DNA of 64,000 bases, from positions 140,455 through 204,454 of IMG/VR virus record IMGVR_UViG_3300044646_001937. One strand, given 5' to 3'. Position 1 is the first letter of the stretch. Every line of letters starts with the position of its first letter. Below, in pieces: positions 698-51,757 of this stretch. A program made the position numbers and the translations under genes. The notes beneath the pieces were generated by a model. The model was not told where the DNA came from, made no database searches, and saw only the letters and a list, made by a program, of their open reading frames with translations.

Positions 698-698
698 T

Positions 699-4315: not shown

Positions 4316-4321
4316 CCTATC

Positions 4322-18452: not shown

Positions 18453-18453
18453 A

Positions 18454-20860: not shown

Positions 20861-20863
20861 TAT

Positions 20864-22906: not shown

Positions 22907-23785
22907 ATGCCATGGGTAGATAGTTTAGACTGGTTATCATTAAACGCGTTAAGAAAATACCCAATAAGGGAAGGTCTTAGCGCGTCTAGTGATGACGGTC
23001 TATTTTCTATACCAGACACATTGATTGTAGATTTTTCACTTTGTGCATCGTCAGATGTGGCAAAAAGATTCTATATATCCAACATATTCAATAAACTTAC
23101 AGCCATAGTAATCACCATATCAGATGATGAAGATGTTGTTGTAGGTACGTTTGAAGCAACCGCACAAGAAGAAGATCTTACATATTATTTAAACGCTACA
23201 GCCGCCTATGCTAGAGCCAACGGAAAACTCACTATAGGCTCTTTTAAAGATTTGCAATATCAGCCATCAGGTAGCTTCACCTTTTCCATAACGGCTACAG
23301 AATTTGAACCAAGAACAATTATTCCAGGACTAAAAGGCATTGATCGTATCAGTTTTACAGATAACATAAACGGCGAACAATCACTAACAGGTAGTGTGCT
23401 GCTTACATCCAGAAATAACTTAATTTTTTCATACGCCGACAATAGAGTGTATATGGATGCTGGTGGAGATATAGGGTTAAATAAGCCATGTGCCACAGGA
23501 AATTGTGTTAAGAGTATAAACGGTGTAAAACCTGATCCTTTAACAGGAGATGTCGGACTTATAGGTATAGACTGCTTGAGTATATTTAGCGATAAAGCAC
23601 ATACTTTAAAGATAGAAGACCTTTGCTGTGTGCCCTGTGCGGGCTGTAATGATCTGGAAGAATTGACTGCCAGGACGATTGAATTAGAGAATAAACTTTT
23701 AGATTTAAGAGATCTCTACAATCAAGCAAACGCCCAATTACAGACTTATTTAAATACTATAAACTCCAATTGCGCATGTCCTTAG
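22907..23785 (+). CDS. Structural protein, paralogue family member 1 (Cys-rich, coiled-coil C-terminus)
   Basis: N-terminal LDWLSLNALRKYP and later SINGVKPDPLTG motifs shared with four other ORFs; ends CCVPCAGC, heptad-like helix, CACP. Confidence 0.7.
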   Translation: MPWVDSLDWLSLNALRKYPIREGLSASSDDGLFSIPDTLIVDFSLCASSDVAKRFYISNIFNKLTAIVITISDDEDVVVGTFEATAQEEDLTYYLNATAAYARANGKLTIGSFKDLQYQPSGSFTFSITATEFEPRTIIPGLKGIDRISFTDNINGEQSLTGSVLLTSRNNLIFSYADNRVYMDAGGDIGLNKPCATGNCVKSINGVKPDPLTGDVGLIGIDCLSIFSDKAHTLKIEDLCCVPCAGCNDLEELTARTIELENKLLDLRDLYNQANAQLQTYLNTINSNCACP

Positions 23786-23809
23786 TTGCTGTTAAAATAA
23801 CAAAATATT

Positions 23810-26800
23810 ATGGCAGCGCTGGAGTACCTAACGCAGAATAGTCTAACATCACATCCTTTTAAAAATTCTTATGGGCTTGAAGAGGGGACAGGTGCTGTCG
23901 ACGGTTGGTTTTACGACATTCTATTTGTTTCGTATGACGACTCTATTCGTAGAGTATACCTCCAAAAAATAGAAAAAAAGGAAAACGGCAGTTTAGAGAT
24001 AGGGATCAATAACGCTGAAACGCTAGCTAGGCTGCCTGAGGGTCTAATAACTATAGCCGCTGAAGATGTTGTAGATCATTATGCCAATAAAATAAAAAGT
24101 TTTGTAGGCGTAGCCAAATCAAAGTTTGCTATTAAGTTTGTGATTGGTCCAACTTTGGCGGCTAAAGAAGCTTTTTCAGAAAATTACCTACCTGCAGTAA
24201 CCGAACTTTCAAGCGATGTAACAGTATTAAACACTGTCAGGGTGAATTCTATTACATTTGAGGCTTATGACGGACCAATTTTAAACACTGTAAAGCTATA
24301 TACTGGAGAAGAAATAGCCCTAGTCGAGCCCAGATATAATTCAACATTTACACTAACAGACACAAGCTCCGGCGAGTTGAGTGTCTCCGCAGGTAGCGGC
24401 GCTGGACTGTATGACAATTGTCCAACCCCAGGAAGTATAACCGATGTTCATACTTTAAATGAAATACCACCAAACTCAGAAGGAACTTTATTTCTACATG
24501 CCACAGAGTGTCATTCATTAAATTTATTAACAACTAATGACGAACTTATATATGGTGATCAATTAGACACCTACAGATCATTTACTTCACCTGGTAATAC
24601 AGAACCGTTCAATGCAGTTAATCCAGAACACACTATAACTTTAGAGAATTTTTGCAGCGTTAAGTGTCCCCATGAAAACGTAAAAGCTTTAGCGTATTAT
24701 ATTAATCGTATAACTGACGGAGCTTCTGGACTAGCTGACATAGCGGTTAGAAATACAGAAACTAGAGGTATAGGTAGTGCTGAAGGAACAGAATTTCATG
24801 TAGATAATGCAGATTTCTGTGATGCTGCTGCGAACATATTCTTAAAATGCCCTGTAGATAGTGAAGCATTCATTCCATGCAATCAGGGTTTTATTAAATA
24901 TTTGCACGAAGGACGCACATTGCAGGTGTCCTACGATAACGCCACAATTACAAATTACACAATTGTTTCTGTGATTAATGAGAATACTGTATTACTAGAC
25001 GGCGCTCCGTCTGGAATAATGGGCAAAATCCCATTTAGGGTAATTGATAGTGGTGTTATAAGTAATATCAATTGCGCTAGCAGTCTTTATAACAAACAAA
25101 ATGACGATAAATTAAAACCATACTTTAAAGTAAGATACAGTACCAGTGAAGCATTCAATTCGGATTTTGAGTATGTCACATACGCAGCAATATCTGTAGG
25201 TGTATTTAATCCAGGTCCAGAACCTGTGCGACTCAATATAGCCTTTAATCCAAATGGACTAGGACAACAAGGCAGTTTTAAAATAAGAAAAACAGATTCA
25301 ATCTACGTTTCCAGCGAAAGTGTAGTTGACTTAGATTGTAAAGAGCACGCATTTGTAGAAGCAGTCTACTATATCAAGTGCGGAGAACCTGCCAGCAATT
25401 TTAGTATATTGGTAACAAACATTACAGCCAACCCAGATGAGATATTAGGAGATGGAGCATATTACCTACCTCCGTTAGTTGGTGTGAGTTGTCCAGGAGA
25501 CATAGCCGGAGCAATAAACACCGTGCAAATTGTAAAGCAAGACACGGACACATTTAGCCAAATCATTGGCGTTGATCCGTTAGTTCAAGATGTTAAAATT
25601 TATGGAACACTTCCTGATTGGTTGACTATAACATTTCAGCCAGCACAATCAGGACAGCCCAGCTCTTCACTAGTGCTTACAGGTACAAAAATATCTACAA
25701 ATAATTATAATACGGAATATAATTTGTATGCAAGATACACAGGCATTGCAATACCTGTGGTATCGCAGCTAGTTATTCAGTATGTGGCTCCGCCCATATT
25801 TATATATCCTACAGAGAAGTATTTTACTCAGGAAAAACCTCTAGTTATTGACCCGCTCATAATTTATACCGAAGAAAATCCACTAACGCAGCTTACTGTG
25901 AAAAACATGGATAAGCCGCTTAGCTGGAACGGTGACAATTTTAGTTCTTATGGAGTTGACGTAATTGCTGAACGCGAGCTACCTCAGGGACTAACGCTAG
26001 ACACGGTTACAGGAAAAATAACAGGAAGGTTGTTAGAGGGGGTAACGGACGAAGGATACTGGAAAATAGCTTTAACAGCTACAAATCCTGCAGGTATAGT
26101 TTCTCAAAATCTTTATCTGGGGGTATCCAAAAGAGCCATCCCTGTAATTTCTTTTTTACAGCAGTTACCTACAGTCATAGATAACTACACCCAATATACG
26201 ATTGAGGAGCCTTTGTGTTCGTTTAAAGCCACAAATGATCCTATCCTTCTATATCAGACGACAGATAAATTACCGTCAGGACTTAGACTGGACACCACCA
26301 AAGGCGTTATATATGGCAAGATTACTGAAACAGCAGCAGGAACCAAAACAATCAATGTTTACGCTAGGAATTTTTATGGAAAATCCATACTTCCGCTAGA
26401 AGTAACGATCTCATATACCATATATAAACAACCAGAAATTCAAGCGCCTACACAGTTTGCAAGATTTAATGGTGAGGACGGCTCCACACTAGAAGAGCCA
26501 CTATGTACAATAGTTGCAACACAAGCCTATGGAGGGCTTAATAATTTTGATCCGCTACTTACAGACGCCACACGCAATCATTACACAGCCACAAATCTAC
26601 CTCCTGGTTTTTCAGTAGATCTTTATACCGGTAAAGTCTATGGAATCCTAGATACTTCTGAAGGTTTTTCAAGAGCCTATGCGGTAACATTAAAAGCCTC
26701 TAATCTAGTTAATACCGCAACTGTACAAATTTACATTACATTTCCAAATGTAAAATTGCCTGTAATTACAAATTTGGCGAGTGGTAGTTTGTTTAAAGTT

Positions 26801-29800
26801 ACTAGGAACCTAGAGTATTCCGTAGAAGCTGGCCCACTGGCGTCAATATATGCGATCTATTTAGACCCTATAATTATCGCCACAGGTTTACCTGCAGGAT
26901 TAACCTGCCTACCTACCGGAGAAGTAGTAGGTATGGTAGACTCTTTGCTACCCGCCGGAGATTATACCGTTTCATTTAGGGCACAAAATAGATATGGAGT
27001 ATCCACCCCAGCTATTGTATGTATCGTACGAGTGGGGATTGAGCTACTTAGCCCACTACCTAACTCAATGTTAAACTTATCTGTGAATGCACAGATTACA
27101 CCAATACAAATTACAACAAGCCAGGGTGTGCCAGTAACACTTACAGTCAGGAATTTACCGGCAGGGCTAACATTTAATAATTCACAAATATACGGCACAC
27201 CGGTTACAGTCGGCAGATCTAAAATATACATAACCGCGTCGGCTGGAGTCTTCGGTATAATAAAAGCCGTCATAAACGTATCCGTGTCAATTCCCACATA
27301 TAGTCTTTCAGGTGCAGTTGTGGGTGTCGACTTAGCAGCGGCAACAAATGTTTTTTTAACCATAACCAGTGTAGAAACTGGCGCTATATACACAATAAAA
27401 ACTACAAGCACGGGCACATACCAACTTAATGGGCTGTATGCAGGGATATACAACGTATCCGCCCGTAAGGATCGATTTGAAATAGAGCCAATCACAAGAA
27501 CAATTACAATTGTAAATACGGATGTTGCATTGCAGAGTTTTTTAATTACAGGACCATACAGACTTATAGTCGGTACAGTAACCAACGCAATTAATAAAAG
27601 CGGTGTAGAGAACGTGGCGATAATTACATTTAATAGGACTGTGTACACAGATACAGCAGGCAGGTTTTTTATAAATTTATTACAGAACGAAGAAATCACA
27701 ATTACTGCGGATGCTGTTTCTTATGTGTTTAATCCAAAAACAATAGATATACCGATTAGTAATGAAGACTCAGGAGGTTATTCGTTTAAAGCCACTCCCT
27801 CGCACAATATTTCAGGAACTATAGTTTCTAAAAACATTGAAGTTCCTGCAAATATTGGAGTTCTGATAGACAATCAGAACACTGGAGAAAAATATTACGA
27901 TATAGCACCTGCAGGCAGCATTTCAGTGCAGGCACTTGACGGAAAATACAAAATATATCCTAACCCTGAAGCATCAGATTATTATAATAGTATATGGCAA
28001 TTTAAGCCAAAGTATATACCTGTAGAGGTGAATGGTCTGTCGATTCAACTAGCGAAATCGTTTAACATATTTTCAGGTAAAACAATATCAGGAAGAGTTA
28101 TTGCTCCGATATATGAAACAGAAATTGGTCTACCTATTCCTGTTGCTGGTGTGGCGATTACTGCCGCAAATATTACTCTAGATCAGACAAGGTTTATTTG
28201 GCTGAAGTTGGATGCAAACAATCCACCGACTATAAAGCTAGATCTAAAAACAATTAGAGCTGCCGCAGCATCCACTGAAAACATTCCTGTGACGGTTGAT
28301 TTTACAACAGGATTTTTTAATCTAAGAGGTACAACAGCAGGACAGCTTTCAATGGATGGATACACTGCGTCAGTAGAAGAAATAATTCTTCTGAAAGATC
28401 AATTTTATCCTGAGTTAAACGGAATATATACAATTGTAAACCCAGGCTCTGCAACAGAGACGTTCCATCTCGTCAGAAGTACTGAAGCAAACTACAATGA
28501 ATCTTTAAAAGTTGGTGCAGCAATATATGTAATTGGAGGCATCACAAACAGCGCTGCTACATATTATTTAACTACTGAAGATCAAGTTACAGCAATTTCA
28601 GATATAGATGGAAATTTCACACTGACAAACGTCTACCCAGACACTTACAACCTATACGCTCATAAAGAAGGTGTTGGTATATTAAGTATTCCTCAAGTCA
28701 ACGTATCCACGAATAATGCAACCAATCTAGTAATCGTGCCTAATACATATCAAATCACTGGCACGATACAGTATAGAGCGAATTATTTAAGCACGACGAA
28801 GACTCCGCTGACAGATGTTCGCATCAGTCTTTATAGAGCAAAAGATTTATTCTTACTTAAAAAAAGCGAGAAATCAAAAGCAGACGGCTCATGGATATTT
28901 AGATCTGTACCTGACGGAGACTATATATTGAAAGCTGAATTTAGAGGAATGACACCTACAGTAGTTGAACAAAAAATTACTGTAGATGATGGCGATGTTA
29001 ATCTGGTTGCCATGGAAGTGTATATAGCTGTTTTTACAGCACCATCCGCACCTATAGTAAATAACATACAGGGTGGTTATAGGTCACTAAAGGTGACAGT
29101 GAGCGAAAACCCAGAAGACATAGGTACAGAAATCCGCTATTACGAATATTCGCTAGACTCAGGCACAACATGGGCAACTGCAGTGAAAACTTCAGACAGC
29201 GAGATATTGATCCCCGATCTCCCTCCAGCAGAAAAAACTATCTTTAAATTAAGAGCCAGAAACTTATGGTCGTATGGACCTGAGGTTGAGCTGCAGGGTG
29301 TTGCATTTGACCGCCCTGGCGCACCTACAATTACAAGTATAGCGCGCAAAAATAAAGAGCTGTTGGTAAATTTTTCACCACCACTATTTTCAGGCGGGCT
29401 ATACATAGACAACTATGCATATTCCACAGACGGAGGTATCACTTTTTTACCTATTACTCCAGCAAACATAACTGGCTCATTTAGTATACTTAAAAGATCA
29501 AATAATGGGTTGGATTTGGTGAATGGTGAAAAATATCAAATAGTCCTTCACGCGCTAGCTGGAGAAGCTGCAGGTTTAGACTCAGAGCCGGAAATAACAT
29601 TCCCTGTAGGTACTCCTGGACCGTCGAGACTTCTGAGTGTTGTCGGCGGAAGATTGAATGAGCTAGATATAAGCTTTGAACCTCCAGAAATAACCAATGG
29701 TGCACCTGTGGCAGATTATGCATATTCTTTAAATGGAGGTCCATTTACACCATTAGGTACAGTTAACAGTCCCGCAACAATAACAAATTTACTCAACGGT

Positions 29801-30523: not shown

Positions 30524-30547
30524 TAGTAAATTAATATTTAAAGCCGT

Positions 30548-35869: not shown

Positions 35870-35937
35870 TGTTACTTATCTGGTTAAATGATTGCAAGAA
35901 GAGGAGCTATGGCTTATTATCTGTATGATATAGCTGT

Positions 35938-41900: not shown

Positions 41901-44900
41901 CTCTGACGGGAAATTAACTAGTGTCCCTGCATTAAAAATAATTACACCAATATCTACAGCTATAAGTGACAAGTATAGTGTATCGGAATGGTTGCACGGC
42001 TATCTAGAAAACAACACATTCAAAGGAGCATCTACGCGTACTGAAAAAGTTTATCGCGCTACGTACGTAGACCAATTTAATAATGTTACGGAAGAAGGCT
42101 ATGATGGTATCCCTACATATAAATACGCTAAAGACGATGTAGTTATACATTATATTGATGTTTACGATACGCAAAATCAGCATTCAAGAGAATCAGTACT
42201 TTATAAGTCTAAAGTAGACAACAACGACAATCCTATATATGACACAGACTATTGGGAGCCTATAACATTACCAGGAGTCAGTAAAGTGGACGGTCAACAT
42301 CCTATACTGCCTGTCCCAGTGATTACCTACTCAATACAACCACCTGACCCACCTATAGTCGTAGACATTATTGAAGAGCATAACCGCATAGGTTTTGTAA
42401 TTAAGCCCCCATATTTTAAAAAATATAAAAATAATTCAACCCAAATAGATGACTTTTTGAGTGCGAATTATTATGACGGAGGAATGGCAAAAGACAGTCC
42501 ACTGGTATTTAGAGCCAATAAATCAATAGGTCTCACAAATCACAAATCACCAGAAGCTCAAGGAATAAGCCTTGAATCAATGCTGCCCACCCTGCGCTTT
42601 AAGTACCCCGCAGCAGGTATAAGCACTGTACAATTTAATAGAAATAATTCAAGTACTTTATTTGCATTTGATAAATACATTGTAGCTGGAGATAACTTAT
42701 ATATAAATGCACCTGGCCAACTTCCAGCTTTATCTAAAGGCTATACTATAAAAAGTATTAGTACGTTGCAGAACGGTTTGTGTGTAATTGAATATTATGA
42801 TGATTTTGCCACGGCGGATAAAAGCTCTTTTGAATTTAACTTTATATTTGGTGGAGGTCATAGCGTATATGTGACTCACAATCCTATAAATGACCACGTA
42901 TTGGTGCCAGACACTACAAAATCAAGATATGAGACAAACACATATTGGTTAAATAACTGTCTTGAAGACGAAGAGTACCTCATAACTATAAGACTAGATA
43001 ATGGCTGGAAACCTAAATTGCAAAAAATAGAAAACACCTACACTAAGGTATATAGAGTTAGAACAAAGAAAATAACGCCACCAGCGCCAGCAATTGATAG
43101 TATTCAATATGACGGTAGTGTATTTAAATTAAATTTTACTTACGGCAGCAGTCCTGTACCCTTGTATTACAATTGGCAAGAGTTGTCCGCTAACGATTAT
43201 ACAGAACTGTCGACCACTGTAAGACAATTACCATTCTACTACGGTATTTCGTTTGCAACCGTAAACGAAACAGTTCTCGCAGGAGGGGAGGCAACCATCA
43301 CAAGGACTAGGTACCGCACAGGATCCTTGGCCCCCATATACAAAGATTATGCAACAAATTACTGGCAGCAGTTGCTGGATATGCGTCAGGACATTACATT
43401 TTCTGCATATAGATGGCCTACAGACGCAGAATTACAGGATATTGAAAGTCAATATAGTCCTGCCGTCTGGCCTACAGGTAAAGAAAGTTATTTGAATGAT
43501 CGAGCTGATAAATGGTTTAGTAGATACAAAATACCTATAGATGCCTACGCGAATAAATCTACGCCAGGCAGCGTGACTGATGTAAAATACTACACCCCAA
43601 ATGCGTCATATCCTTATGATGAACAAGGGGTAATGGCGTTATCTACACAAACAGACATTTACTCAAGCAATCCTATGCTCTTGTCTCCTGTAGGTATTAA
43701 AAACGATCCTAGAGGGCGAGCGTATTTAACAGCATACCGAAGATACTGGGATGATGAGAATTATAAAATTCCCTCTGACGCAATTAGCTCGCTATCTAGT
43801 AATACTGATACATTTGGAGAAAGACCCACACATATACCCATATATTCTCCAACAGGTAAGACATTGCGTGACGATAATAAAGTTTGCGGTTTATTGTACA
43901 CTTCTGACGAGTATTTTAACAAACATCCCTATTATCAAGATTATGCCGATTCAATATACCTCTCAATATATAGGGCACCGTTTAGACGAAAAGCTGCCAA
44001 CAATGCCGTAAATAACATACATGCAGATATAGATTCATCTGGGTATAGCTACAGTCATATTAACTTTCCTGTACGCGCAACACTCGGAAGCTCAAAATAT
44101 ACTAACAATCAACAGATTACTTTAAACTCAAATGGTTTTTATAGTGTACCCTCGATTTCCTCGATCCCCAACTCAGATACTACATACTACAGCTCTTCCT
44201 ATGTAGACACATATTTTGGTATACCTGCTGCGATTAATTATTTTTTAACTACAAACATTGAAGATTACATTCCGTTATATAGAGAAACAGCCGTGGTTAG
44301 ATCAAATTTAAGTGAGGACCTACTGGAGTCTCAACGTGTACTAGCTGTAGTTAAATATGATAACTCTCCTTACACAGAAATTATATCCACAGCTTTTCCT
44401 GGGCTAGCCTTCAATAGACGTAAAGATTACGAAGCTTCAGAAATAGATGTACCCATCACAGATAATTTAAATTTATTTTCAGAAATAGCTGCAAACTACT
44501 ACACGGATTGGTTTGCAAATGACCTCTATGTACCACCCAAGAAAAAATATTCAAACTTTGAAACCTTTTCTGCTATAGAGCAAGAGGAGTTTCACGCTGT
44601 GTCAGATTTTGCGGTACTTAAATCTTATAATAGAAATATTCCCACATATGCAGTTTATGTCTGCCAGTCCCAGAATATTTGCTGTGTGATGTCTTCAGGC
44701 AATTTAAACGGTATAAGTAAGAACGAAAACGACAATCCGTCAGATACCTTTTCGTCGCTGCTGCCTTTTGAGCATAGACCTTATATCAGTAATCAGACAC
44801 CCTTTGTTGAGTGGGGATTTAGGCGTAACTACTTTCAAACTCTTGACTATGGCTATAGTAAAAGCTTTCTTGACTACGACAGGTACGTTTGGCCCGTTCT

Positions 44901-46788
44901 ATCTGAAGGAAATATCAAAGATCCCAATAGGACAGGAGCTGCTCCAACATACCCAGCGTCACACATGTCACCCATCGAATTGTCAGGGGCATACGACGCA
45001 TCATGGTCCGCCAGAAACACCATACAGCTAAACAAGAATATTTCAGGAGATATGGTTGGGGAAAACATTAAAAATTTAAAAATGTCTCAACCTACCCATG
45101 TAGCAATTGACGGGCAAGGTAACATATATATTTCTGATACTGGAAATAAAAAGATTAAATTACTCACCAGATCAGAAACAATTAAAGACCCCAACCTGCA
45201 CGAGAGTGATATTAAAAATTTAATTAATTATACTTCGGCAAGAACGATAAGTACTTTAGATGAGTTTCCTGGACAGCTTGAAGTTAGTGACGACGGAAAC
45301 ACCATCACCTTCCTAGCTGGCGGAAAACTATACCGCAGAATCAAGGGTGTAAATTATTTAATTACAGGTGAAAATTTAAATACCACCAATAAAACACCTG
45401 CAAAAAATTATCAATGGCCTGTGTACAGTGCCGCATGGGGTAGGTCTCTACCGGAAGACTACGGTAAAGAATTTATATCTAGCTTTATTCAGACAACTAA
45501 TGGAAGTACAATATTCTTCAGTAACGGTAGAGGCAAGGTTGTAAAAATTAATTGCATGACTAATTTAGACAAAATTGCTTATGTAGAATACTCTTTTGAC
45601 AACATAACATTTACGAAATATTCCGAAACCACAGGCATCCCAGTACCTAATGTGCAGTTAGGTACAGCTATACCTATGTATTTTAGGACTGTGTCTACGG
45701 ATAATGTACGAAGCACTACAGTACAATTAACTACAGATCCGTATTTAAAGGCAAACGAAAGTGTAGCCGTATCCTCAGTGACAGCGGCCCTGCAATTTAA
45801 AGCAACCGATTATTTTACGCATAAAGACGGGACTACACAACGCAGGGCAAGATATCTAGTTACACCACCATCAATAGTTACATCACTTTCCGAAGGGGAA
45901 AATTTTCCTAAAAATATAATAACGCTCGTGCAATCAACTAGAGTTACATCTGTAAATAATAGCGCATTTGTTATCGCCGAAGCTAAACAAAGATTAAACT
46001 ATGTACAAAAAATAATGCGGCTAAAATCTACTACAGCAGCAGATCTAGTTAAACTTAAAAAAGAAGAAGAGTTGGCTCTTAAATTAATTGCAAGCCCTTC
46101 ACTGGATGTAAGAACCTCCGATGCATGGAGATTCAGAAATGTTTCTTCTGCCCCTATATCTGGAATTTCTAAATATGATTTCCTCGAAATGGATGTAACG
46201 ATTAAATTTACGGCAAGCAGGAATACCGGTATCACCTCAATAAACCCAACGCCAATACCCTACACCGATTACATCGTAATCATCAAAAATATTACAAAGA
46301 ATAGGGTTTTTGAAATAACAGGCGACGCAACTAAATATAAATATATTAAATCAAAAGAAATAGATCCTGCGTCCGGGGTTATAACATACGTTGTCAGATT
46401 CTACAACGACACCTACGTTACCGAGAGTAATCCAAGATTTAAACATTGGAGAACACGCCCGATATTCACAGATTCAGAGCCTCCAGCGTACGAGTACCAT
46501 AGAGTGCCTAGACAATTAAAAAAATTCGGCAATTACACCAGTCCAATAAATCTAGGCCAATCTTACATTAGACCGGCAGACGCAGCGCTTGATAGAGGTT
46601 GGTATTCTAATGAGTATGTGGAGTTTTCAGGTCCTGATTTTTCTAAAGGAGACACTTTAGAAATATATATTGTTCCGGACAAAACAAAATACTCTAAGCG
46701 AGCAAGTTACACACCATATACTATAACTATGAGTGACGCAACTAACCTGCAGCTTACTGGAGCTAAAGGACAATCAGTGGTTTACTAG
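35938..46788 (+). CDS. Giant (3616 aa) beta-rich virion protein with scattered FN3-like and NHL-like elements
   Basis: Uninterrupted 10.85-kb ORF, Y/T/S/P/N-rich. FN3-like signatures (FRSVSANGAG, LRCVNEVGQG, PPDPP, PPAPAI) and an NHL-like PTHVAIDGQGNIYISDTGN. Confidence 0.8.
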   Translation: MEKTSLIEYKLKSYLGGVLAKLKYVNSPLTPLTKVEYSFDGVTWTELSSQAFSNTIIAQDPVTPYIYTIERIFVPLAEYRDYLISFRLTNTVATGAQSIPGIGRRGGPPEALVVKPTLTRLPYMNRYTNVAFSVFSTLSSTVVGKMIVTFEYDPMLDGGSGSTPITDVLISLDSRQTWLQPDTLEVFKTTKQSNVVETYVAGDTNRTFSGIGTFVRVSYTLPQGGDFTYLQDSPIYYKTINFAGESPAIKIVTKLPLVIVTSPNNPDYPILNKIESSDWYFGSNQEVRRDLQVYLELPESTGFGEPYQLQSTQLLDLAELTPVSVTPPEGQQALKNIDLTVTTVGDTFRRGERLKIYSQANPSKIWFIAQVTSNSRVNPVLSLDILEKYAVTPYSISVNSFANGADEFHKNTPLWNIHNHPINYPLLDLYVGDQLRDDDVFVSGRTLSFFRKDISFNDIYFYATIISKDINIGKLTIKITSKSDCLQNNCHNNQSFLTSWEITPIMTSADTFPTEANDWVIEPLYPVLEARYNLAEASNPNSIIEKGTAGLTIIKDDNNIPTLGYFTIRGISDIETYALNMTYGPAGAEFLSRLSPTSTIQCSLLSIAQKVTFLPIRTYTEAVYTNEFVSWWYLSKLTPLVSQTEIKFKLPLAPNDNSTIAVAYRKIVRTEIENIEGITTPSSLYEGRVVGELNFVALQSTPTTDALREITFPIDEATHLNNEGRRVEISYEISFLKIIRNLTSNNEELLTELNKLKDKIPGDIVKTTISIPGAQPIDFVLGRELLNPTAIGLTLVYNDQLPGYEYLDFKDTQAQDITLKQTDFYRSTIEYSTNQGGSWRHVLKPGIPAYDEKFSQVNTTYYQNIGADIITFTEENYNVYPAGTLLSGETIQDYTYVVEALDAFSVRISKPQKASAFSPAVKSSVLAKYTGTSTTYTRFQKGTAIMYVDKYLDYTTDLPVKIANTTLTGAANIIAQRPYMLGNVKNYNQSTGRLEIVITSITTSPVSGALDNLSSWEITHALRKKTYIDKFISILYGYTNNYFSSASNTKRPTIYVGNLAEAQAYSIWLRTSNTLYGKGPIIKLSGTTTALPSSPPTVDVKLTIAGFDIDISPGFAEKAWIQAPQAAIQGYEYAIISGNVWYDVDVTPTWNTLNNGVITGLTQNAEYMLSFRSVSANGAGPATVPKVYKTASLPLKITSLTGFMPLIGITEIVLPSEIVLSAIPYTIEYELEQGYYDKLGRYIDDPTLAGKTGILADNSLLNLYTDLTATAIFNETQINSIRTYFVKLRCVNEVGQGPWSDTFILSVLSPEIRPVKVKWSPGPSCILIDEIGLMDTELKLNLTRGTRPAEIKTLNSAVRWQYAKVVTVAPRILTDNRIYYTGNEQKYTDAGQEEPVIHLKNALAAVEWQNIVSNTIPMEDEQSVILLFRAANAAGGIEMTDVLGYDGAYSRFTYNPIEPYGFASKYFQDGPEFDTYHRTKSIYQYDTDRPNRCYGALFKKTSFSANCPLPRLAYNKYGRYIKYQEELFSPFFNLEERTIKTQPFLDFELSYVKNYEQLGGINDTVYTSPMLTCTELPCELGVSSSVQVSAATEDILAPNDFVIITDSLTGGVAHRYALAYVKSVDEIDESNKTKSGYKIFWLNEETTAAALGSGFMSPWPEGLPTSVYNVVDSSSFRLHTLSELQPKFAKDPWTITSGYLPVSNTPGIIAAFKTTSNLFSGALPFRDADGKDFWSVTLNMSMTNYFENTYVGIKVYKYNNNPNQYATNTLTLLGESRFFRSEEPDINVFAQYNAVFFIPEEGIIFDIYDEIYLEIFACIKPNTLTHPPGTLSTQHTVTIKFDSSSYLSTTIPKDFKYRDQMVTFDVLRIGRLIPSNRAFYTPSAGARSYINKYAASVGFLIQGNVNWASLRQSLEQMLPVYRPYDLFPAQSPIAIEQGLVGDSWSQGNSYELVTLVPSRYYTDPLTPSIVNGSVFKVNGNTPAEYSLFSDGKLTSVPALKIITPISTAISDKYSVSEWLHGYLENNTFKGASTRTEKVYRATYVDQFNNVTEEGYDGIPTYKYAKDDVVIHYIDVYDTQNQHSRESVLYKSKVDNNDNPIYDTDYWEPITLPGVSKVDGQHPILPVPVITYSIQPPDPPIVVDIIEEHNRIGFVIKPPYFKKYKNNSTQIDDFLSANYYDGGMAKDSPLVFRANKSIGLTNHKSPEAQGISLESMLPTLRFKYPAAGISTVQFNRNNSSTLFAFDKYIVAGDNLYINAPGQLPALSKGYTIKSISTLQNGLCVIEYYDDFATADKSSFEFNFIFGGGHSVYVTHNPINDHVLVPDTTKSRYETNTYWLNNCLEDEEYLITIRLDNGWKPKLQKIENTYTKVYRVRTKKITPPAPAIDSIQYDGSVFKLNFTYGSSPVPLYYNWQELSANDYTELSTTVRQLPFYYGISFATVNETVLAGGEATITRTRYRTGSLAPIYKDYATNYWQQLLDMRQDITFSAYRWPTDAELQDIESQYSPAVWPTGKESYLNDRADKWFSRYKIPIDAYANKSTPGSVTDVKYYTPNASYPYDEQGVMALSTQTDIYSSNPMLLSPVGIKNDPRGRAYLTAYRRYWDDENYKIPSDAISSLSSNTDTFGERPTHIPIYSPTGKTLRDDNKVCGLLYTSDEYFNKHPYYQDYADSIYLSIYRAPFRRKAANNAVNNIHADIDSSGYSYSHINFPVRATLGSSKYTNNQQITLNSNGFYSVPSISSIPNSDTTYYSSSYVDTYFGIPAAINYFLTTNIEDYIPLYRETAVVRSNLSEDLLESQRVLAVVKYDNSPYTEIISTAFPGLAFNRRKDYEASEIDVPITDNLNLFSEIAANYYTDWFANDLYVPPKKKYSNFETFSAIEQEEFHAVSDFAVLKSYNRNIPTYAVYVCQSQNICCVMSSGNLNGISKNENDNPSDTFSSLLPFEHRPYISNQTPFVEWGFRRNYFQTLDYGYSKSFLDYDRYVWPVLSEGNIKDPNRTGAAPTYPASHMSPIELSGAYDASWSARNTIQLNKNISGDMVGENIKNLKMSQPTHVAIDGQGNIYISDTGNKKIKLLTRSETIKDPNLHESDIKNLINYTSARTISTLDEFPGQLEVSDDGNTITFLAGGKLYRRIKGVNYLITGENLNTTNKTPAKNYQWPVYSAAWGRSLPEDYGKEFISSFIQTTNGSTIFFSNGRGKVVKINCMTNLDKIAYVEYSFDNITFTKYSETTGIPVPNVQLGTAIPMYFRTVSTDNVRSTTVQLTTDPYLKANESVAVSSVTAALQFKATDYFTHKDGTTQRRARYLVTPPSIVTSLSEGENFPKNIITLVQSTRVTSVNNSAFVIAEAKQRLNYVQKIMRLKSTTAADLVKLKKEEELALKLIASPSLDVRTSDAWRFRNVSSAPISGISKYDFLEMDVTIKFTASRNTGITSINPTPIPYTDYIVIIKNITKNRVFEITGDATKYKYIKSKEIDPASGVITYVVRFYNDTYVTESNPRFKHWRTRPIFTDSEPPAYEYHRVPRQLKKFGNYTSPINLGQSYIRPADAALDRGWYSNEYVEFSGPDFSKGDTLEIYIVPDKTKYSKRASYTPYTITMSDATNLQLTGAKGQSVVY

Positions 46789-46838
46789 TATTATTTATTC
46801 ATGTTTTAATTTAGAGTATTGCTGATATAATTTAATCT

Positions 46839-48152
46839 ATGTCGATAGTCGCCTTAACTCACAACAATAAAAACCAGTACAGGAAGTATCCATTCAAACA
46901 AGGAGCTTCACTTAAAACTGTACAAGGGCGCACATTATCGGATGCAGTAATTGTCAACATATCTCTCACAAGCACTTACGGAAGACACAGGGTTTATGTA
47001 AAACAAGTTTTTTACAAAGACAGCACCATGACTGTAACAATAGCTTCAGTCTTTGATGATACTGTGTTAGGGGCATTTTACGGGGACGTTACAGAAGATT
47101 TTACAACATTATCGCTAATACCCTTTGTAAGGTTTGTCAGCGGGAATATCACACTAGGATCATTAAACGCACTAGATTCAATTACTGCGATATTGAATTT
47201 TACAGCAGCCAATAGTGAATTGGAAGAATCTACGATATTTTGCTATAAGGTACCAGGAGTAACCAGTATAAATGACTCAAAGAAAAACCAGGTTAGAGGT
47301 AATGTTAATTTCGGTAATTTGACAAATCTAGATAAAGCAACTTCAACTGGTAGCGTGCTGTTTACTGTGGTAAACACCACAAGTATTCAAAACACTTCAG
47401 ATAGGTCTTCTTATTTTGGAAACTGTGCCACGCCAATAATAAAAACAATTAACGGCGTCTACCCTATGAGCGCTGTAGAAAACACCCCTACAGACAACGA
47501 TGGCAATCTGTATCTTGTAGGAGTGAAGCCTGTAGTTTTTTATGGTACTCCAGGGCAGGACGACACGATGACTCCAGGTAACCTGAAAATTGATGCTGAA
47601 AATATGACAATCAGTACACTGTGTACTGAAAAGTATAAAGCAATCCCACCAGTGAACGTGTCTGGTTTTACAACAGCAGAAAGTAAAAATCTTTATTTCA
47701 ATAAACCGGATTTGTTAAAAAACTCTCAAGCCGCCATATATCCTTACACAATACCTGCAAGAGTATCCTCTAATGTGTTCGATGTTAAATTACCAGAATA
47801 CTACTATTGGCCTCAATATGTAAAACCAGAGTACTATAACGAATGGCAATTATTGGTACCTTCTACACCAACAATCACATCAGTTGTACCAACCAGCTAC
47901 GGTGCTGCAGTATATTTCACTCCTCCTAAAAATCCTAGCGTCTCAGGCATTACATTCTACAGCTATAGCATAGACAATGGCACAGATTGGAGGACGCTTA
48001 CAAATGTAACAAACCCATTCAATATATCTAATCTATTGCAGCCGGAGACAGACTATTATTTAATACTTAAAGCCCATAACTCTCTGCTATCTGCGGGCGG
48101 AGGAGAACCATCAGCACCGTTTAAATTTACGACACTACCATACTCAAATTAG
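46839..48152 (+). CDS. Paralogue family member 3 with C-terminal FN3 domain
   Basis: NNKNQYRKYPF and TINGVYP motifs; C-terminal PSTPTITSV...YSYSIDNGTDW...YYLILKAHN. Confidence 0.75.
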   Translation: MSIVALTHNNKNQYRKYPFKQGASLKTVQGRTLSDAVIVNISLTSTYGRHRVYVKQVFYKDSTMTVTIASVFDDTVLGAFYGDVTEDFTTLSLIPFVRFVSGNITLGSLNALDSITAILNFTAANSELEESTIFCYKVPGVTSINDSKKNQVRGNVNFGNLTNLDKATSTGSVLFTVVNTTSIQNTSDRSSYFGNCATPIIKTINGVYPMSAVENTPTDNDGNLYLVGVKPVVFYGTPGQDDTMTPGNLKIDAENMTISTLCTEKYKAIPPVNVSGFTTAESKNLYFNKPDLLKNSQAAIYPYTIPARVSSNVFDVKLPEYYYWPQYVKPEYYNEWQLLVPSTPTITSVVPTSYGAAVYFTPPKNPSVSGITFYSYSIDNGTDWRTLTNVTNPFNISNLLQPETDYYLILKAHNSLLSAGGGEPSAPFKFTTLPYSN

Positions 48153-48159
48153 ATTATTT

Positions 48160-48873
48160 ATGGCTAAATATAATATATTAAATTGGCAAAATGAAAACAG
48201 TCTATCTAATTTTCCGTTAGTTTCTTATATAGAATTTCGCGACTTTTTGGTAGATGCAAGTTTTGTACAATTCGATAATTTTATACCAATTTTAAATACT
48301 ATTGCTGTGGACGAAACTAACGTCACGCTCACCATAACTTTTGATTATGGCGTGAATAGCGGTATAGTACTATCAAAGCAAACATTTCTTCAAAATCCAA
48401 ACAGTGCATATATACGGTTGTATACCCCCACAAATGACAGATATCTTGGAGTAATTTCATTTGGCCCAGGTACATTAGATTTATTCAAAACTCACATAGG
48501 GCGCATATTAACATTAGATATGCAGTTCTCCCCAGACGCTGTGAGAAGCATCCCGCTGCAGGATGCGGTATATACATTTGACGGAATTTACGGCGATCTG
48601 GTACTTGGTAGAGGCGCTACGGACGACTCGATATTCTACAATATATCAACAGCAAAAAATACTATTGTTTTTAATGCTGTGAAATATCATGAAATAACAC
48701 CCTCTAATCAAAAACAAGGTTTGCGTAAAATTAACCTCGTACCTCCATTGGAGAATAATATCAATCTGTCTTCTAACGAGGTGATTAGGGTGACACCTGA
48801 CAGCTCAAATTCTTTACGAATATCGCTAGTGTCAGGATCACCAAGTAACGCATTTCAGATTTCTAAAGTATAA
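48160..48873 (+). CDS. Paralogue family member 4
   Basis: LNWQNENSLSNFP and KINLVPP motifs; 237 aa. Confidence 0.7.
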   Translation: MAKYNILNWQNENSLSNFPLVSYIEFRDFLVDASFVQFDNFIPILNTIAVDETNVTLTITFDYGVNSGIVLSKQTFLQNPNSAYIRLYTPTNDRYLGVISFGPGTLDLFKTHIGRILTLDMQFSPDAVRSIPLQDAVYTFDGIYGDLVLGRGATDDSIFYNISTAKNTIVFNAVKYHEITPSNQKQGLRKINLVPPLENNINLSSNEVIRVTPDSSNSLRISLVSGSPSNAFQISKV

Positions 48874-48876
48874 TTT

Positions 48877-49776
48877 ATGGAACAGGTAATTGATTGGTTA
48901 AATGAAAATGAAAATAGAGCCTACCCGCTACTTGATAACTACCCTAAAATTGGTCAAGTAGAAGGCTCGGATGTAGACATACCTGAAAACTTATTACTAG
49001 ACCTTCAGCTAATAACATCGCTAAGCCTATCTGCAACCTCAAATGTACTTTTAAAAAATATCAGCTATTCATTAACTGACAACAATTCTACTGTAACCTT
49101 TGGTACAGCCGAAAACACGATCACCGAGTTCATAATAACTGATTTTAACCAACAAACATATCCATTATATGTAAGGAATACAGATGGCTGCCTTGCTGTG
49201 TTTGGTCCAGGACTGTATACATTAAGCTTGGTGGCACCTCCAGACGCTAGTATAGTAACAAATATCCCAATAGAACCCAGCCTATGTACACAGTTTAACG
49301 ACGCTTGGTTAGGAGTAAACAAATTAAGTACATCTCCAGAAAAGGTTACAAATTTAGGCTCTTTAAATGTAACTCTCCCTCTGCAAAAAATATTGGAAAA
49401 TTCGATACACGAGCTTACTGGGGATATAACATTTGCAGAGGGTTATAACTTCTACGTAAGTATTTTTGAAAATCTAATTGACCTGGGTGTTGGTCGAGAT
49501 TATGGTTTAAAAGTGAGCTGCGATACATTTTTCCTAGATGAAGTCTACCTTGATTGTGACGAAATTGTGTCATATATAAACGGTGTGCCTCCTGACGAAA
49601 ATGGTAACTTTAAGCTTGAAGCAGGAACAAATATCTCAATTACTCCAGGTATAAATATATCTGAGACTTTTGTGGATAATTTTCTTGAAGACGCTAACGC
49701 TCATTCCCTATTCGTAGGCATGAACTTCTCAGCGGAAGATATTTGCGCTCCATTAAAATTAAGACCAAGCCGATAG
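48877..49776 (+). CDS. Paralogue family member 5
   Basis: IDWLNENENRAYP and YINGVPPDENGN motifs; 299 aa. Confidence 0.7.
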   Translation: MEQVIDWLNENENRAYPLLDNYPKIGQVEGSDVDIPENLLLDLQLITSLSLSATSNVLLKNISYSLTDNNSTVTFGTAENTITEFIITDFNQQTYPLYVRNTDGCLAVFGPGLYTLSLVAPPDASIVTNIPIEPSLCTQFNDAWLGVNKLSTSPEKVTNLGSLNVTLPLQKILENSIHELTGDITFAEGYNFYVSIFENLIDLGVGRDYGLKVSCDTFFLDEVYLDCDEIVSYINGVPPDENGNFKLEAGTNISITPGINISETFVDNFLEDANAHSLFVGMNFSAEDICAPLKLRPSR

Positions 49777-49780
49777 TAAT

Positions 49781-50107
49781 ATGCAAAACACAAACAATAA
49801 AAGACTAGTGCTAACAAGCGTTAATCAGGTAATTACATTGTTTAAATCGAATCCACAGCTTGCAGAGCAGATGCCCAGGTTTAAGCAGATCACAGAGATG
49901 CCGTTAAGCACAACCCCCAAAAAGTCCTGCAATTGCGGAGCCAAGCAAAATTTCGTCACACCTGACGCAAATAAGCAAACAGCAGAGAATATTCTCTCAT
50001 CAATGGTTACATCAGATTTTTTAAAGATTAAAAGTATTTTAGAGCTCAATCAATTGTGCTATTATAAGAGAGGTGACAAAGGCGCACTTGATCTTATCTG
50101 TGTATGA
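49781..50107 (+). CDS. Hypothetical protein with CxC motif
   Basis: 108 aa, KKSCNCG; coupled to the next ORF. Confidence 0.6.
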   Translation: MQNTNNKRLVLTSVNQVITLFKSNPQLAEQMPRFKQITEMPLSTTPKKSCNCGAKQNFVTPDANKQTAENILSSMVTSDFLKIKSILELNQLCYYKRGDKGALDLICV

Positions 50108-50799
50108 CAAACAACATCCATAATATTCCTCAGTTTTTTACAGTAGACGCAAAAGGTGACGCCCAGGCTGCGTACAGTGAACTTTTTGATGGTTATGAAG
50201 TCACTAAAGAGTCAAGAATCACACCTAGGGTAAATAATAGCCATGAAAAGACTCCAGCTGTCCGAGCAATAGGAGTTCCAGGGATTCCTTTTGAAAGAGG
50301 AGAACCTAACCCAGATGTTTTCTATCAAGGTGAGGATATAGTGTATGATCTGTATCTTTATTTTGACGGCGCACCTGTGTCTGTAGCTGACTATGATATT
50401 ATGGTAATGGTAAAGGCCAGCCCAAGAGCTTTTACGGTAGTATGGGAAGGTAAGCTAGATTCAGGTATATACCCTATTCAAAATGCTCCAGGTTTATTTG
50501 AAGTTTGGATACCCTCAAGCGCAACAGAGCAATTGCGTGCAGGTACATATCACATCGAGGTACAGTTGGTAGAATCTTTAGCTAGAGGCAAAGGTAGACA
50601 TGATAGAAAACATGTATTACTCCAACACGTATTCAATATTGACTATAGTACATTCTCCACAAAACCTGAAACAAGGTCAGCACTGGGCGAAAAACTTACC
50701 AGAGAGGGAGTAGAGGCTACCTGGCCTAACAGCCCTGATACTGTAGGTAAGTTTATAGGTGGAGAAGGGCAGAGCAGTGGCATGCCATCCAAAATGTAA
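50104..50799 (+). CDS. Ig-like (BppU-N-type) structural protein
   Basis: GEDIVYDLYL...GLFEVWIPSSATEQLRAGTYHIEVQL resembles baseplate-upper-protein Ig-like domains. Confidence 0.45.
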   Translation: MTNNIHNIPQFFTVDAKGDAQAAYSELFDGYEVTKESRITPRVNNSHEKTPAVRAIGVPGIPFERGEPNPDVFYQGEDIVYDLYLYFDGAPVSVADYDIMVMVKASPRAFTVVWEGKLDSGIYPIQNAPGLFEVWIPSSATEQLRAGTYHIEVQLVESLARGKGRHDRKHVLLQHVFNIDYSTFSTKPETRSALGEKLTREGVEATWPNSPDTVGKFIGGEGQSSGMPSKM

Positions 50800-51358: not shown

Positions 51359-51757
51359 GGGGGTGAACCGGTTTCGACTGTGTATGAGCCCCTGCAGCAG
51401 CATGTAGAGGAAGCCTGGTTGGCCTCTTAAAAAATCTAGGTAAAATAAACGCAAAGTCTGAATTTGACTTCGCCCCTTCGGTAGCAGAAGCGGATGCATT
51501 CCTCAAGGCCGCCGGCTTTGTGGATGCTGAGCTCCTCGCTGCATAAGGTACAGACTGGATGCTATTAAAAGTCTGTAAATGTTAGTAGCTGGTGCTTGAA
51601 GAAAAGAATTGCCGCTCAAGCAGAACAAATAACAATTCAAGAGAATGCGTACAGTTTGTCTTCCGACGATACGCATTCTTACAAAAGGAAGGCTAAGCAT
51701 GTAGACGCTGTAGGATAAGTATACAGGACAGGGGTTCGACTCCCCTCACCTCCACCA
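51359..51757 (+). ncRNA. ssrA: tmRNA (transfer-messenger RNA), 399 nt
   Basis: 5' GGGGGTGAACCGGTTTCGAC and 3' GGACAGGGGTTCGACTCCCCTCACCTCCACCA with encoded CCA. 7-bp acceptor stem with G3-U70. Pseudoknot 1 is AGAGG/CCTCT + CCTGG/CTAGG, helix 2 is CCTGCAGC/GCTGTAGG. Tag ORF 51451-51546 ends LLAA-TAA. Confidence 0.95.

What the first reader, a model, noticed from the sequence alone, without database searches (positions are those of the whole stretch)
22907..49776. Five paralogues of one uncharacterised ~200-250-aa domain bracket the giant fibre genes
Seen in ORFs 22907, 23810, 46839, 48160 and 48877. N-terminal motif: LDWLSLNALRKYP / LEYLTQNSLTSHP / THNNKNQYRKYP / LNWQNENSLSNFP / IDWLNENENRAYP. 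Second motif: LIVDFSL / FYDILFV / VIVNISL / FLVDASF / LLLDLQL. Third motif: SINGVKPD / TLNEIPPN / TINGVYP / KINLVPP / YINGVPPD. Two members are fused to Ig/FN3 arrays. Inference: a hetero-oligomeric adaptor or branching hub that mounts several fibres on the baseplate, analogous in role to branched tailspike complexes.
Basis: partly seen in the sequence, partly recalled or inferred. Interest (0 to 1): 0.68.

Follow-up and report, generated by a model that had tools for sequence, protein, structure and literature searches.

The report
Five paralogous fibre-anchor modules, jumbo phage
An uncultured 204-kb phage, and every relative examined, encodes exactly five ancient copies of a previously undescribed N-terminal protein module that most likely fastens five different fibre or strut proteins to the tail baseplate, much as other large phages do with unrelated modules.

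Summary
ORFs 22907, 23810, 46839, 48160 and 48877 share a homologous N-terminal module of about 230-250 aa. Family profiles match at 95-99.5% hhalign probability for six of ten pairs, while decoys score 3% or less. The three motifs sit in the same alignment columns. The family HMMs find only these five among the 528 ORFs of the 204-kb genome, and the giants P6 and P7 lack the module. All eight related genomes examined have exactly five copies in the same order, and the families are separated by long stem branches, so the duplications are old.

The module has no match in Pfam, PHROGs, NCBIfam or the PDB (best Z 4.7). It nevertheless defines a large metagenomic superfamily of 3,668 clusters at 50% identity, and it lies at the N-terminus of proteins of 234-4,643 aa.

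Both AlphaFold models show a confident C2-like beta-sandwich followed by a region that folds poorly as a monomer. A P1 homotrimer is supported in silico (score 0.54, best control 0.00), with the INGV-P motif at the core of the interface.

Best reading: a baseplate-proximal anchor and trimerisation module for five fixed peripheral baseplate proteins. phiKZ gp131/133/134/135 is a functional precedent but not a detectable homologue.

The parts
22907..23785 (+). P1, 292 aa. Shared anchor module (about residues 1-245), then a cysteine-rich segment and a five-heptad coiled coil (247-288). Length is constant across the clade (275-328 aa, one outlier of 931).
   Evidence: nine invariant Cys; fold; lengths; homotrimer 0.54 against 0.00.
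23810..30523 (+). P2, 2237 aa. Anchor module (23810-24559) fused to a giant array of He_PIG Ig, CarboxypepD_reg and fn3 domains. This is the hypervariable member (235-4,643 aa among listed representatives, median 2,473). It ends in TAG TAG TAA.
30548..35869 (+). P6, 1773-aa FN3-rich giant without the anchor module. It is a lineage-specific insertion at the P2|P3 junction.
   Evidence: no module; absent in most relatives.
35938..46788 (+). P7, 3616-aa giant without the anchor module and with no Pfam or PHROGs match. It is part of the same lineage-specific insertion.
46839..48152 (+). P3, 437 aa. Anchor module plus linker plus a single C-terminal FN3-like domain (about residues 331-437). Moderately variable (234-481 aa, one outlier of 2,325).
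48160..48873 (+). P4, 237 aa. The minimal and most divergent member, with about 45 residues after the INLVPP motif. Constant length (232-262 aa in loci and representatives).
   Evidence: (4-5 95.6%, 1-4 80.1%).
48877..49776 (+). P5, 299 aa. Anchor module with an insertion in its second half and a short C-terminal tail. Constant length (269-385 aa).
   Evidence: (sandwich pLDDT 90-97).
16830..20268 (+). Context: a gp6-like baseplate wedge protein (16830-18452) and the following 607-aa protein (18445-20268). These are candidate docking partners for the anchors.
   Evidence: phrog_6, E 2.3e-5. The role of the 607-aa protein is inferred from gene order only.
20294..22897 (+). Context: conserved 188-aa and 677-aa proteins immediately upstream of P1 in all related loci. 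Function unknown; candidate peripheral baseplate components.
49781..50799 (+). Context: two small genes (108 and 231 aa) that follow P5 in nearly all related loci. They are not members of the family.

Best explanation
The five genes encode five ancient, non-interchangeable paralogues of a previously undescribed N-terminal anchor and oligomerisation module for peripheral baseplate proteins of a clade of uncultured ~150-200-kb myovirus-like phages. The module has three parts. First comes a short peptide (about residues 5-19, consensus L-W-N-N-LR-YP) that is the best conserved segment across families yet is disordered in monomer models; it is inferred to be the docking peptide that plugs into the baseplate periphery. 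Second comes a C2-like eight-stranded beta-sandwich (about residues 20-140). Third comes a beta-rich region (about 140-245) ending in the INGV-P--GN motif, which folds poorly as a monomer and forms the inter-chain core of a predicted trimer. Each paralogue is proposed to form its own homo-oligomer, probably a trimer, and to occupy its own fixed site on each of the six wedges. P2, and to a lesser extent P3, continue into variable Ig, CarboxypepD_reg and FN3 host-binding fibres. P1 (cysteine-stapled coiled-coil stub), P4 and P5 are constant-length structural members. The anchor-less giants P6 and P7 are lineage-specific additions that must mount secondarily. Shown: homology, copy number, gene order, N-terminal position, predicted folds and the in-silico trimer. 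Inferred: virion location, the docking role of the peptide, stoichiometry and host binding.
For: Homology. Only five copies among the genome's 528 ORFs. Exactly five in each of eight related genomes, with P1 identity as low as 36% (the sixth hit in G005 is one ORF split in two). Fixed order P1-P2-[insertions]-P3-P4-P5 in 35 loci, including a minimal 299/582/279/232/352-aa version. In the tree, families F3, F4 and F5 have 100% support and F2 has 91%, on stems of 0.7-2.4 substitutions per site. In nearly all of the 150 listed superfamily hits the module starts within the first ten residues, on proteins of 234-4,643 aa. Length variability is confined to P2 and P3. The cluster lies directly downstream of a gp6-like wedge gene in a module that also has a VgrG/DUF2345-like spike. 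Residues 1-15 (P1) and 1-13 (P5) have pLDDT below 50, although this segment holds the invariant N13 and P19. P1 homotrimer: score 0.54 against a best control of 0.00; 20 of 30 solved homo-pairs and 1 of 23 single chains reached that mark; the runs agree in at least 79% of contacts; partner pLDDT is at least 72. The tightest contacts are at residues 201-235 and at heptad positions 246-285, and residues 1-41 are not listed in the interface. Precedents for paralogous N-terminal anchors on baseplate trimers: Pfam family PF07880, named T4_gp9_10_N, and phiKZ gp131/133/134/135 (PMC13250141, section 12).
Against: There is no direct evidence that any of the five proteins is in the virion, because no cultured relative exists: tblastn of P1 and P5 against 50,697 phage records found nothing. 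The docking partner is unknown and untested. The complex predictor cannot distinguish a natural homotrimer from a heterotrimer of paralogues, its calibration used two copies rather than three, and the tool states that unnamed residues are uncertain rather than non-contacting. Strong cross-family conservation of both the N-terminal peptide and the trimer-core motif would equally allow mixed assemblies. FN3 and Ig arrays are often monomeric beads on a string, which fits a trimeric shaft poorly for P2. The models have no significant structural neighbour, so the fold gives no functional support.
Confidence: 0.55

Rival explanations
1. Hetero-oligomeric hub. The paralogues co-assemble through their shared module into mixed trimers or hexamers. 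One possibility is a P3/P4/P5 heterotrimer next to P1 and P2 homotrimers. This would form one branched base per wedge from which only P2 and P3 extend as fibres, and onto which P6 and P7 dock.
For: The strictly conserved set of five in eight of eight genomes, with a fixed order and an always-contiguous P3-P4-P5 trio, is what a stoichiometric hetero-complex predicts. Independent receptor-binding proteins would be expected to vary in number. The trimer-core motif and the N-terminal peptide are the segments best conserved between families, so the interfaces could be compatible. P4 and P5 have no distal module of their own. phiKZ provides a direct precedent: a candidate hetero-hexameric fibre base of gp131x3, gp133, gp134 and gp135 built from paralogous N-termini (PMC13250141, section 12).
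Against: P1 ends in a canonical five-heptad coiled coil that none of the other four has, so P1 needs copies of itself or an unknown helix, and a P1 homotrimer is confidently predicted. No heteromeric combination was tested. P4 and P5 are present in relatives that lack P6 and P7, so they are not dedicated adaptors for those giants.
Confidence: 0.3
2. Purely structural baseplate periphery. The module is a building block of the outer baseplate lattice (struts or a ring, like T4 gp8/gp10/gp11 or the phiKZ star-lobe proteins) and not a fibre anchor. On this view the distal arrays of P2 and P3 are decorations with no role in mounting other fibres.
For: Three of the five members (P1, P4, P5) have constant length and no recognisable binding domain. 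The cluster sits within the wedge gene block. Jumbo-phage baseplates are known to contain large peripheral lattices (PMC13250141, section 11).
Against: The module is N-terminal in front of extensions of up to 4,643 aa that vary widely between close relatives, which is the hallmark of host-range proteins. The distinction from the main explanation is one of degree.
Confidence: 0.1
3. Chance or convergent resemblance. The motifs are low-information, and the five proteins merely share a generic beta-sandwich.
For: Several single-sequence pairs are not significant on their own (for example P3-P4 and P2-P4), and the 3-4 profile pair is at noise level.
Against: Six of ten profile pairs score at least 95%, with 116-254 aligned columns starting at the N-terminus, while all 40 decoys score 3% or less. 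Each family HMM retrieves the other members, and no other ORF significantly, from the 528 genome ORFs. The motifs are in register.
Confidence: 0.02

Closest known systems
phiKZ gp131 / gp133 / gp134 / gp135 (gp131-like N-terminal domains of the tail-fibre base)
   Same: Both are contiguous paralogous genes in a jumbo-phage tail module that share an N-terminal region of about 200-300 aa while their C-termini differ (gp131-gp133 1e-21, gp134-gp135 6e-32). In phiKZ the N-termini form the fibre attachment complex on the outer baseplate (PMC13250141, section 12). The window's phage also encodes a phiKZ-type RNA polymerase beta-like subunit.
   Different: There is no detectable sequence relationship: hhalign is 0.5% or less for all five families and for A5, and the A5 HMM finds nothing in the phiKZ genome at E<=1. 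phiKZ follows its N-domain with NPH helix repeats and a six-helix bundle, whereas this family ends in an INGV-P beta motif. phiKZ is described with four members in the complex, this clade with a fixed five. The phiKZ complex is modelled as a hetero-hexamer, whereas here only a homotrimer was tested.
T4 gp9 and gp10 (Pfam PF07880, T4_gp9_10_N) and the gp10-type branching hubs of CBA120-like and Klebsiella jumbo phages
   Same: Different baseplate proteins share one N-terminal attachment domain, and their genes follow gp6/gp7 in the genome (from the Pfam family name and my own knowledge of T4). A weak ESM Atlas row pointed to a PF07880 cluster (TM 0.23).
   Different: PF07880 does not match any of the five proteins (E<=1). 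Its only hit in the genome is a 10.7-bit match in an unrelated ORF. The A5 HMM finds nothing in T4 or CBA120. No T4 baseplate chain reached Z 5 in the structure searches.
Chimallivirus DUF7941 (PF25613) paralogues, such as Goslar gp22/gp23 and phiKZ gp126/gp127
   Same: This is a paralogous family on the peripheral baseplate. Some members are fused to variable binding domains, and they are predicted to oligomerise through a flexible segment binding a globular N-domain (bioRxiv 10.64898/2026.04.21.720040).
   Different: PF25613 recognises phiKZ gp126 and gp127 but none of the five proteins and nothing in the whole genome. DUF7941 is proposed to form head-to-tail filaments, not trimeric anchors.

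Membership tests
The new superfamily defined here (alignment A5) | N-terminal L-W-N-N-LR-YP peptide with invariant Asn and Pro | tested here: met
   N13 and P19 are invariant in 75 sequences of the five families. The motif occupies the same columns in all five window proteins.
The new superfamily defined here (alignment A5) | C2-like beta-sandwich at about residues 20-140 with the same strand order | tested here: met
   Modelled for P1 (pLDDT 86-94) and P5 (90-97) with matching element order. Inferred for P2-P4 from profile alignment only.
The new superfamily defined here (alignment A5) | INGV-P--GN motif closing the module | tested here: met
   I204, N205 and P209 are at least 90% conserved and are in register in all five proteins. 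The motif lies at the core of the predicted P1 trimer interface.
T4 gp9/gp10 N-terminal domain (PF07880) | Match to the Pfam model above the gathering score | tested here: not met
   No hit at E<=1 in any of the five proteins. The genome-wide best is 10.7 bits, in another ORF. The reverse search of T4 with A5 is empty.
phiKZ gp131-like N-terminal domain | Sequence or profile similarity to gp131/133/134/135 N-termini | tested here: not met
   hhalign probability is 0.5% or less, hmmsearch E is 0.05 or higher against a five-sequence database, and the A5 search of the phiKZ genome is empty.
phiKZ gp131-like N-terminal domain | Same three-dimensional fold as the gp131-like N-domain | not testable with these tools
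   The phiKZ N-domains were only fitted as AlphaFold3 models (PMC13250141), and proteins known only from that record cannot be folded here. No phiKZ chain appeared among the listed fold-search rows.
phiKZ gp131-like N-terminal domain | Paralogues co-assemble into a hetero-oligomeric fibre base | not tested
DUF7941 (PF25613) | Match to the Pfam model | tested here: not met
   Positive control: phiKZ gp126 and gp127 match. The five proteins do not, and neither does the genome.
Trimeric phage fibre / peripheral baseplate proteins (functional class) | Homo-trimerisation | tested here: inconclusive
   In silico only, and for P1 only: score 0.54, best control 0.00, 20 of 30 solved homo-pairs against 1 of 23 single chains reaching the mark, at least 79% contact agreement, partner pLDDT at least 72. 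The copy number of three was assumed, not compared with two or four.
Trimeric phage fibre / peripheral baseplate proteins (functional class) | Presence in the virion, attached to the baseplate | not testable with these tools
   Only gene context supports it: the cluster lies downstream of a gp6-like wedge gene. No cultured relative was found.

The most novel reading that the evidence does not exclude
The five paralogues co-assemble into one pseudo-symmetric hetero-oligomeric fibre base per wedge, for example a P3/P4/P5 heterotrimer beside P1 and P2 trimers. This would be an independent invention, on a new fold, of the hetero-oligomeric fibre hub just described for phiKZ. The conserved N-terminal peptide of one subunit would plug into the sandwich of the next or into a repeated baseplate socket, and the anchor-less giants P6 and P7 would dock onto the stub members.
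Probability: 0.27. Interest if true: 0.72.

Novelty: new variant of a known kind. Interest (0 to 1): 0.5.

Why it matters
The module defines a large family that no database names: 3,668 clusters at 50% identity and about 1,700 at E<=1e-10. It marks the host-recognition apparatus of a widespread clade of uncultured jumbo phages. Recognising it lets annotators find the start of the fibre and receptor-binding genes in these genomes, including proteins of up to 4,643 aa. It separates the constant structural members (P1, P4, P5) from the hypervariable host-range member (P2). It also pinpoints the P2|P3 junction as the place where extra giant fibre genes are inserted. Together with T4 gp9/gp10 and phiKZ gp131-135, it is a third, sequence-unrelated case of large myoviruses building a multi-fibre baseplate by duplicating one anchor module, which suggests a general route to complex adsorption machines. 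The fixed count of five gives a concrete prediction for cryo-EM or co-expression experiments.

Tried and rejected
- **Library scans of the five proteins:** Pfam, PHROGs and NCBIfam gave nothing meaningful.
- **Deposited phages:** megablast of 6 kb of the window, and tblastn of P1 and P5, against 50,697 phage records found no match. The gp6-like protein finds only a 21%-coverage hit in Vibrio phages.
- **PDB by sequence profile:** nothing below E 0.85.
- **Structure searches with the P1 and P5 models:** Foldseek against the PDB had no hit at E<=1e-3. VIA-align best Z values were 4.7 and 3.9, to generic C2 domains. BFVD's best hit was an uncharacterised 1189-aa protein of the N4-like Pseudomonas phage Zuri (E 5e-3, TMq 0.32). 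The ESM Atlas gave TM 0.34 or less.
- **Zuri lead:** followed up with the A5 profile against its genome; no match at E<=10. Dropped.
- **T4 gp9/gp10 lead:** rejected by sequence.
- **phiKZ homology:** rejected by hhalign. An apparent shared [YL]P[FL] N-terminal motif and an INGH segment in gp132 were examined and judged incidental.
- **DUF7941:** rejected.
- **P2 and P6 as one gene read through a stop** (they share a reading frame): rejected, because P2 ends in TAG TAG TAA.
- **Word-indexed protein search with A5:** returned only P1-type proteins named 'hypothetical protein'.
- **Careful maximum-likelihood tree:** did not finish in time, so only the quick tree is cited.
Full report
**Source and gene layout.** The window is the last 64 kb (140455-204454) of a complete 204,454-bp IMG/VR virus record with direct terminal repeats. 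Identical P1 protein is found on contigs from at least three independent samples. The region holds a continuous plus-strand block of structural genes. These include a VgrG/DUF2345-like protein (5349-7844), a gp6-like baseplate wedge protein (16830-18452, phrog_6), a 607-aa protein, and conserved 188-aa and 677-aa proteins. The genes of the finding follow:

| Gene | Coordinates | Length (aa) |
|---|---|---|
| P1 | 22907-23785 | 292 |
| P2 | 23810-30523 | 2237 |
| P6 | 30548-35869 | 1773 |
| P7 | 35938-46788 | 3616 |
| P3 | 46839-48152 | 437 |
| P4 | 48160-48873 | 237 |
| P5 | 48877-49776 | 299 |

**Is the paralogy real?** Single-sequence comparisons give one clearly significant pair, P1-P3 (1e-11, 52.8 bits). 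Several other pairs are weak but collinear alignments starting at the N-terminus: P1-P5 7e-5, P4-P5 5e-3 and P1-P2 0.02. I collected orthologues from 35 related IMG/VR loci and from a protein search (114 clusters of P1-type proteins, all 'hypothetical'). I then built one alignment per family and compared the profiles.

| Family pair | hhalign probability (%) |
|---|---|
| 1-3 | 99.5 |
| 1-5 | 98.8 |
| 1-2 | 98.5 |
| 2-5 | 97.1 |
| 2-3 | 96.3 |
| 4-5 | 95.6 |
| 3-5 | 87.5 |
| 1-4 | 80.1 |
| 2-4 | 53 |
| 3-4 | 4.6 |

The stronger pairs align over 116-254 columns from the N-terminus. Twenty reversed-profile decoys and twenty comparisons with four neighbouring gene families never exceeded 3%. Each family HMM, run against all 528 ORFs of the genome, retrieved the other paralogues and no other ORF below E 0.4. 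P6 and P7 do not contain the module.

In a 75-sequence cross-family alignment, N13 and P19 are invariant, and G111, I204, N205 and P209 are at least 90% conserved. P4 is the most divergent member.

**Conservation of the set.** The gene order P1-P2-[optional anchor-less giants]-P3-P4-P5, followed by two small genes, is kept in all the loci. A distant pair of contigs (L036/L037, with P1 36% identical to the window's) carries a minimal contiguous version of 299, 582, 279, 232 and 352 aa. Profile searches of eight large or complete genomes of the clade give exactly five copies in each; the sixth hit in G005 is one ORF matched in two pieces. In six of the eight, P2 abuts P3, so P6 and P7 are lineage-specific insertions at that junction.

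A quick maximum-likelihood tree recovers families 3, 4 and 5 with 100% SH-aLRT support and family 2 with 91%. Family 1 is left unresolved only by one open fork. The family stems are 0.7-2.4 substitutions per site (the careful search did not finish). The five-fold duplication therefore predates the divergence of the clade.

**Distribution.** The cross-family profile finds 3,668 representatives at 50% identity with E<=1e-3, of which 1,722 have E<=1e-10, among 1.84 billion proteins. In nearly all of the 150 listed hits the module begins within the first ten residues of proteins of 234-4,643 aa. I classified those 150, plus two, by family:

| Family | Length range (aa) | Outlier (aa) |
|---|---|---|
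| P1 | 275-328 | 931 |
| P2 | 235-4,643 (median 2,473) | none |
| P3 | 234-481 | 2,325 |
| P4 | 242-255 | none |
| P5 | 269-385 | none |

Variability is therefore concentrated in P2 and, to a lesser degree, in P3. P2's extension is a true array of He_PIG Ig, CarboxypepD_reg and fn3 domains. P3 has a single FN3-like domain that Pfam misses but that matches the FN3 repeats of P2 and P6 (full-sequence E 1.5e-7 and 3.2e-6 in a three-protein database).

**Fold.** AlphaFold2 models were made of P1 (51-sequence alignment, mean pLDDT 72) and P5 (66 sequences from all five families, mean pLDDT 78). Both show a confident beta-sandwich at about residues 20-140 (pLDDT 86-97) with the same order of six strands, a helix and a strand. 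Both have a disordered N-terminal peptide (pLDDT below 50 for residues 1-15 in P1 and 1-13 in P5) and a poorly determined region from about 140 to 250. P1 ends in a 42-residue helix.

No solved or predicted structure matches significantly. Foldseek against the PDB gives no hit at E<=1e-3. An exhaustive alignment against 48,161 PDB representatives gives a best Z of 4.7 (P1) and 3.9 (P5), both to the same generic C2-type sandwiches. BFVD and the ESM Atlas give only weak rows. The shared weak neighbours are consistent with P1 and P5 having one fold, but they say nothing about function.

**Oligomeric state.** P1's C-terminal helix has a clean 3-4 hydrophobic spacing over five heptads (read from the sequence) and is flanked by nine cysteines that are invariant in 51 sequences. 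None of the other four paralogues has such a helix.

A three-copy prediction of P1 passed the tool's test. The score was 0.54 and the best of three controls was 0.00. Twenty of 30 solved homo-pairs and 1 of 23 single chains reach that mark. The runs agree in at least 79% of contacts, and the partner pLDDT is at least 72. The tool notes that its calibration used two copies and its own alignments, so these counts hold only roughly. The lowest-error contacts link residues 201-220 of one chain to 209-235 of the next, which is the INGV-P--GN motif region, followed by the heptad positions 246-285. Residues 1-41 are not listed in the interface, although the tool warns that unnamed residues are merely uncertain.

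My reading is that motif 3 is the oligomerisation core. That would explain why this region folds poorly as a monomer. The highly conserved yet disordered motif 1 would then be left free to bind something else. This prediction cannot distinguish a natural homotrimer from a mixed trimer of paralogues.

**Comparison with known systems.**
- **phiKZ.** The closest functional precedent is phiKZ. Its contiguous paralogues gp131, gp133, gp134 and gp135 share an N-terminal region. In the 2026 virion atlas they are fitted as a candidate hetero-hexameric fibre base (gp131x3 plus gp133, gp134 and gp135) under the outer baseplate (PMC13250141, sections 11-12). Homology is not detectable: hhalign gives 0.5% or less, and the profile finds nothing in the phiKZ genome. 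The phiKZ proteins continue with NPH helix repeats, not an INGV-P motif.
- **T4 and CBA120.** T4 gp9 and gp10 share the PF07880 N-terminal domain. PF07880 does not match the five proteins, and the profile finds nothing in T4 or CBA120.
- **DUF7941.** Chimallivirus DUF7941 paralogues (bioRxiv 10.64898/2026.04.21.720040) are a third analogue. PF25613 recognises phiKZ gp126 and gp127 but nothing in this genome.

The module works like these systems but is a member of none of them.

**Verdict.** The paralogy is real, ancient and fixed at five. The module is a new domain family, in the sense that no library or solved structure covers it. Its position in the genome and at the protein N-terminus, its variable C-terminal cargo and its predicted trimer core make a baseplate-proximal anchor and oligomerisation role the best-supported function (confidence 0.55). 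Whether the five act as separate homo-oligomers or as a mixed hub (0.3) is open. The strictly conserved set and the phiKZ precedent favour the hub. P1's private coiled coil and its predicted homotrimer favour independence. The concept of duplicated anchor modules that build a multi-fibre baseplate is known, so I rate this a new variant of a known kind, with moderate interest (0.5).

**Limits.** No reads tools were used, and no genetic code other than table 11 was needed. No step had to be referred.

Noticed in passing
window 51359-51757 (+): A full-length phage-encoded tmRNA about 560 nt downstream of the last gene of the fibre cluster. Rfam RF00023 gives 148.4 bits, E 2.6e-58, covering model positions 1-374 of 374. 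ARAGORN predicts a 31-residue tag peptide.
   Followed up: partly
window 15293-15925 (+): A 210-aa protein with a sigma-70 region 3 match (PF04539, 30 bits, above the cut-off; phrog_351, E 2e-11) sits in the middle of the baseplate gene block, an unusual place for a transcription factor.
   Followed up: no
window 35938-46788 (+): P7, a 3,616-aa protein, has no Pfam or PHROGs match at all and lacks the anchor module. With P6 it forms a 16-kb lineage-specific insertion at the P2|P3 junction. How such anchor-less giants attach to the virion is unexplained.
   Followed up: partly
window 23480-23785 (P1 residues about 195-291): Nine cysteines are invariant in 51 P1 orthologues (C195, C200, C223, C240, C241, C244, C247, C289, C291). 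They flank the coiled coil, which suggests disulfide or metal stapling of an extracellular stalk.
   Followed up: no
window 30521-30529: P2 terminates in three consecutive stop codons (TAG TAG TAA), and P6 starts 24 nt later in the same frame. The two are separate genes, not a read-through product.
   Followed up: yes
G000:C1:123382-125232 (L049:3382-5229), outside the window: A 616-aa protein matches phage multisubunit RNA polymerase beta-subunit families (phrog_25354 E 2e-36; phrog_3015 E 2e-18). It lies about 8 kb upstream of a head maturation protease (L049:13187-14626). This hints at a phiKZ-like, possibly virion-packaged RNA polymerase and a distant link to that group of jumbo phages.
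   Followed up: no
G000:C1:66764-69211 (L046:6764-9208), outside the window: An 815-aa protein matches tail-fibre PHROGs, some annotated as collagen-like minor tail (phrog_5073, E 3e-50). It is encoded about 95 kb away from the baseplate cluster, so the phage has at least one further fibre-like protein that lacks the anchor module.
   Followed up: no
window 49781-50799 (+): Two small genes (108 and 231 aa) follow P5 in nearly all related loci and have no family match. They may be assembly factors or further baseplate parts.
   Followed up: partly
L054 (ENA ERZ922604, contig from run SRR3137750): The exact P1 protein also occurs on a contig labelled as a crustacean metagenome and in another ENA assembly, so near-identical phages occur in several independent samples.
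   Followed up: no
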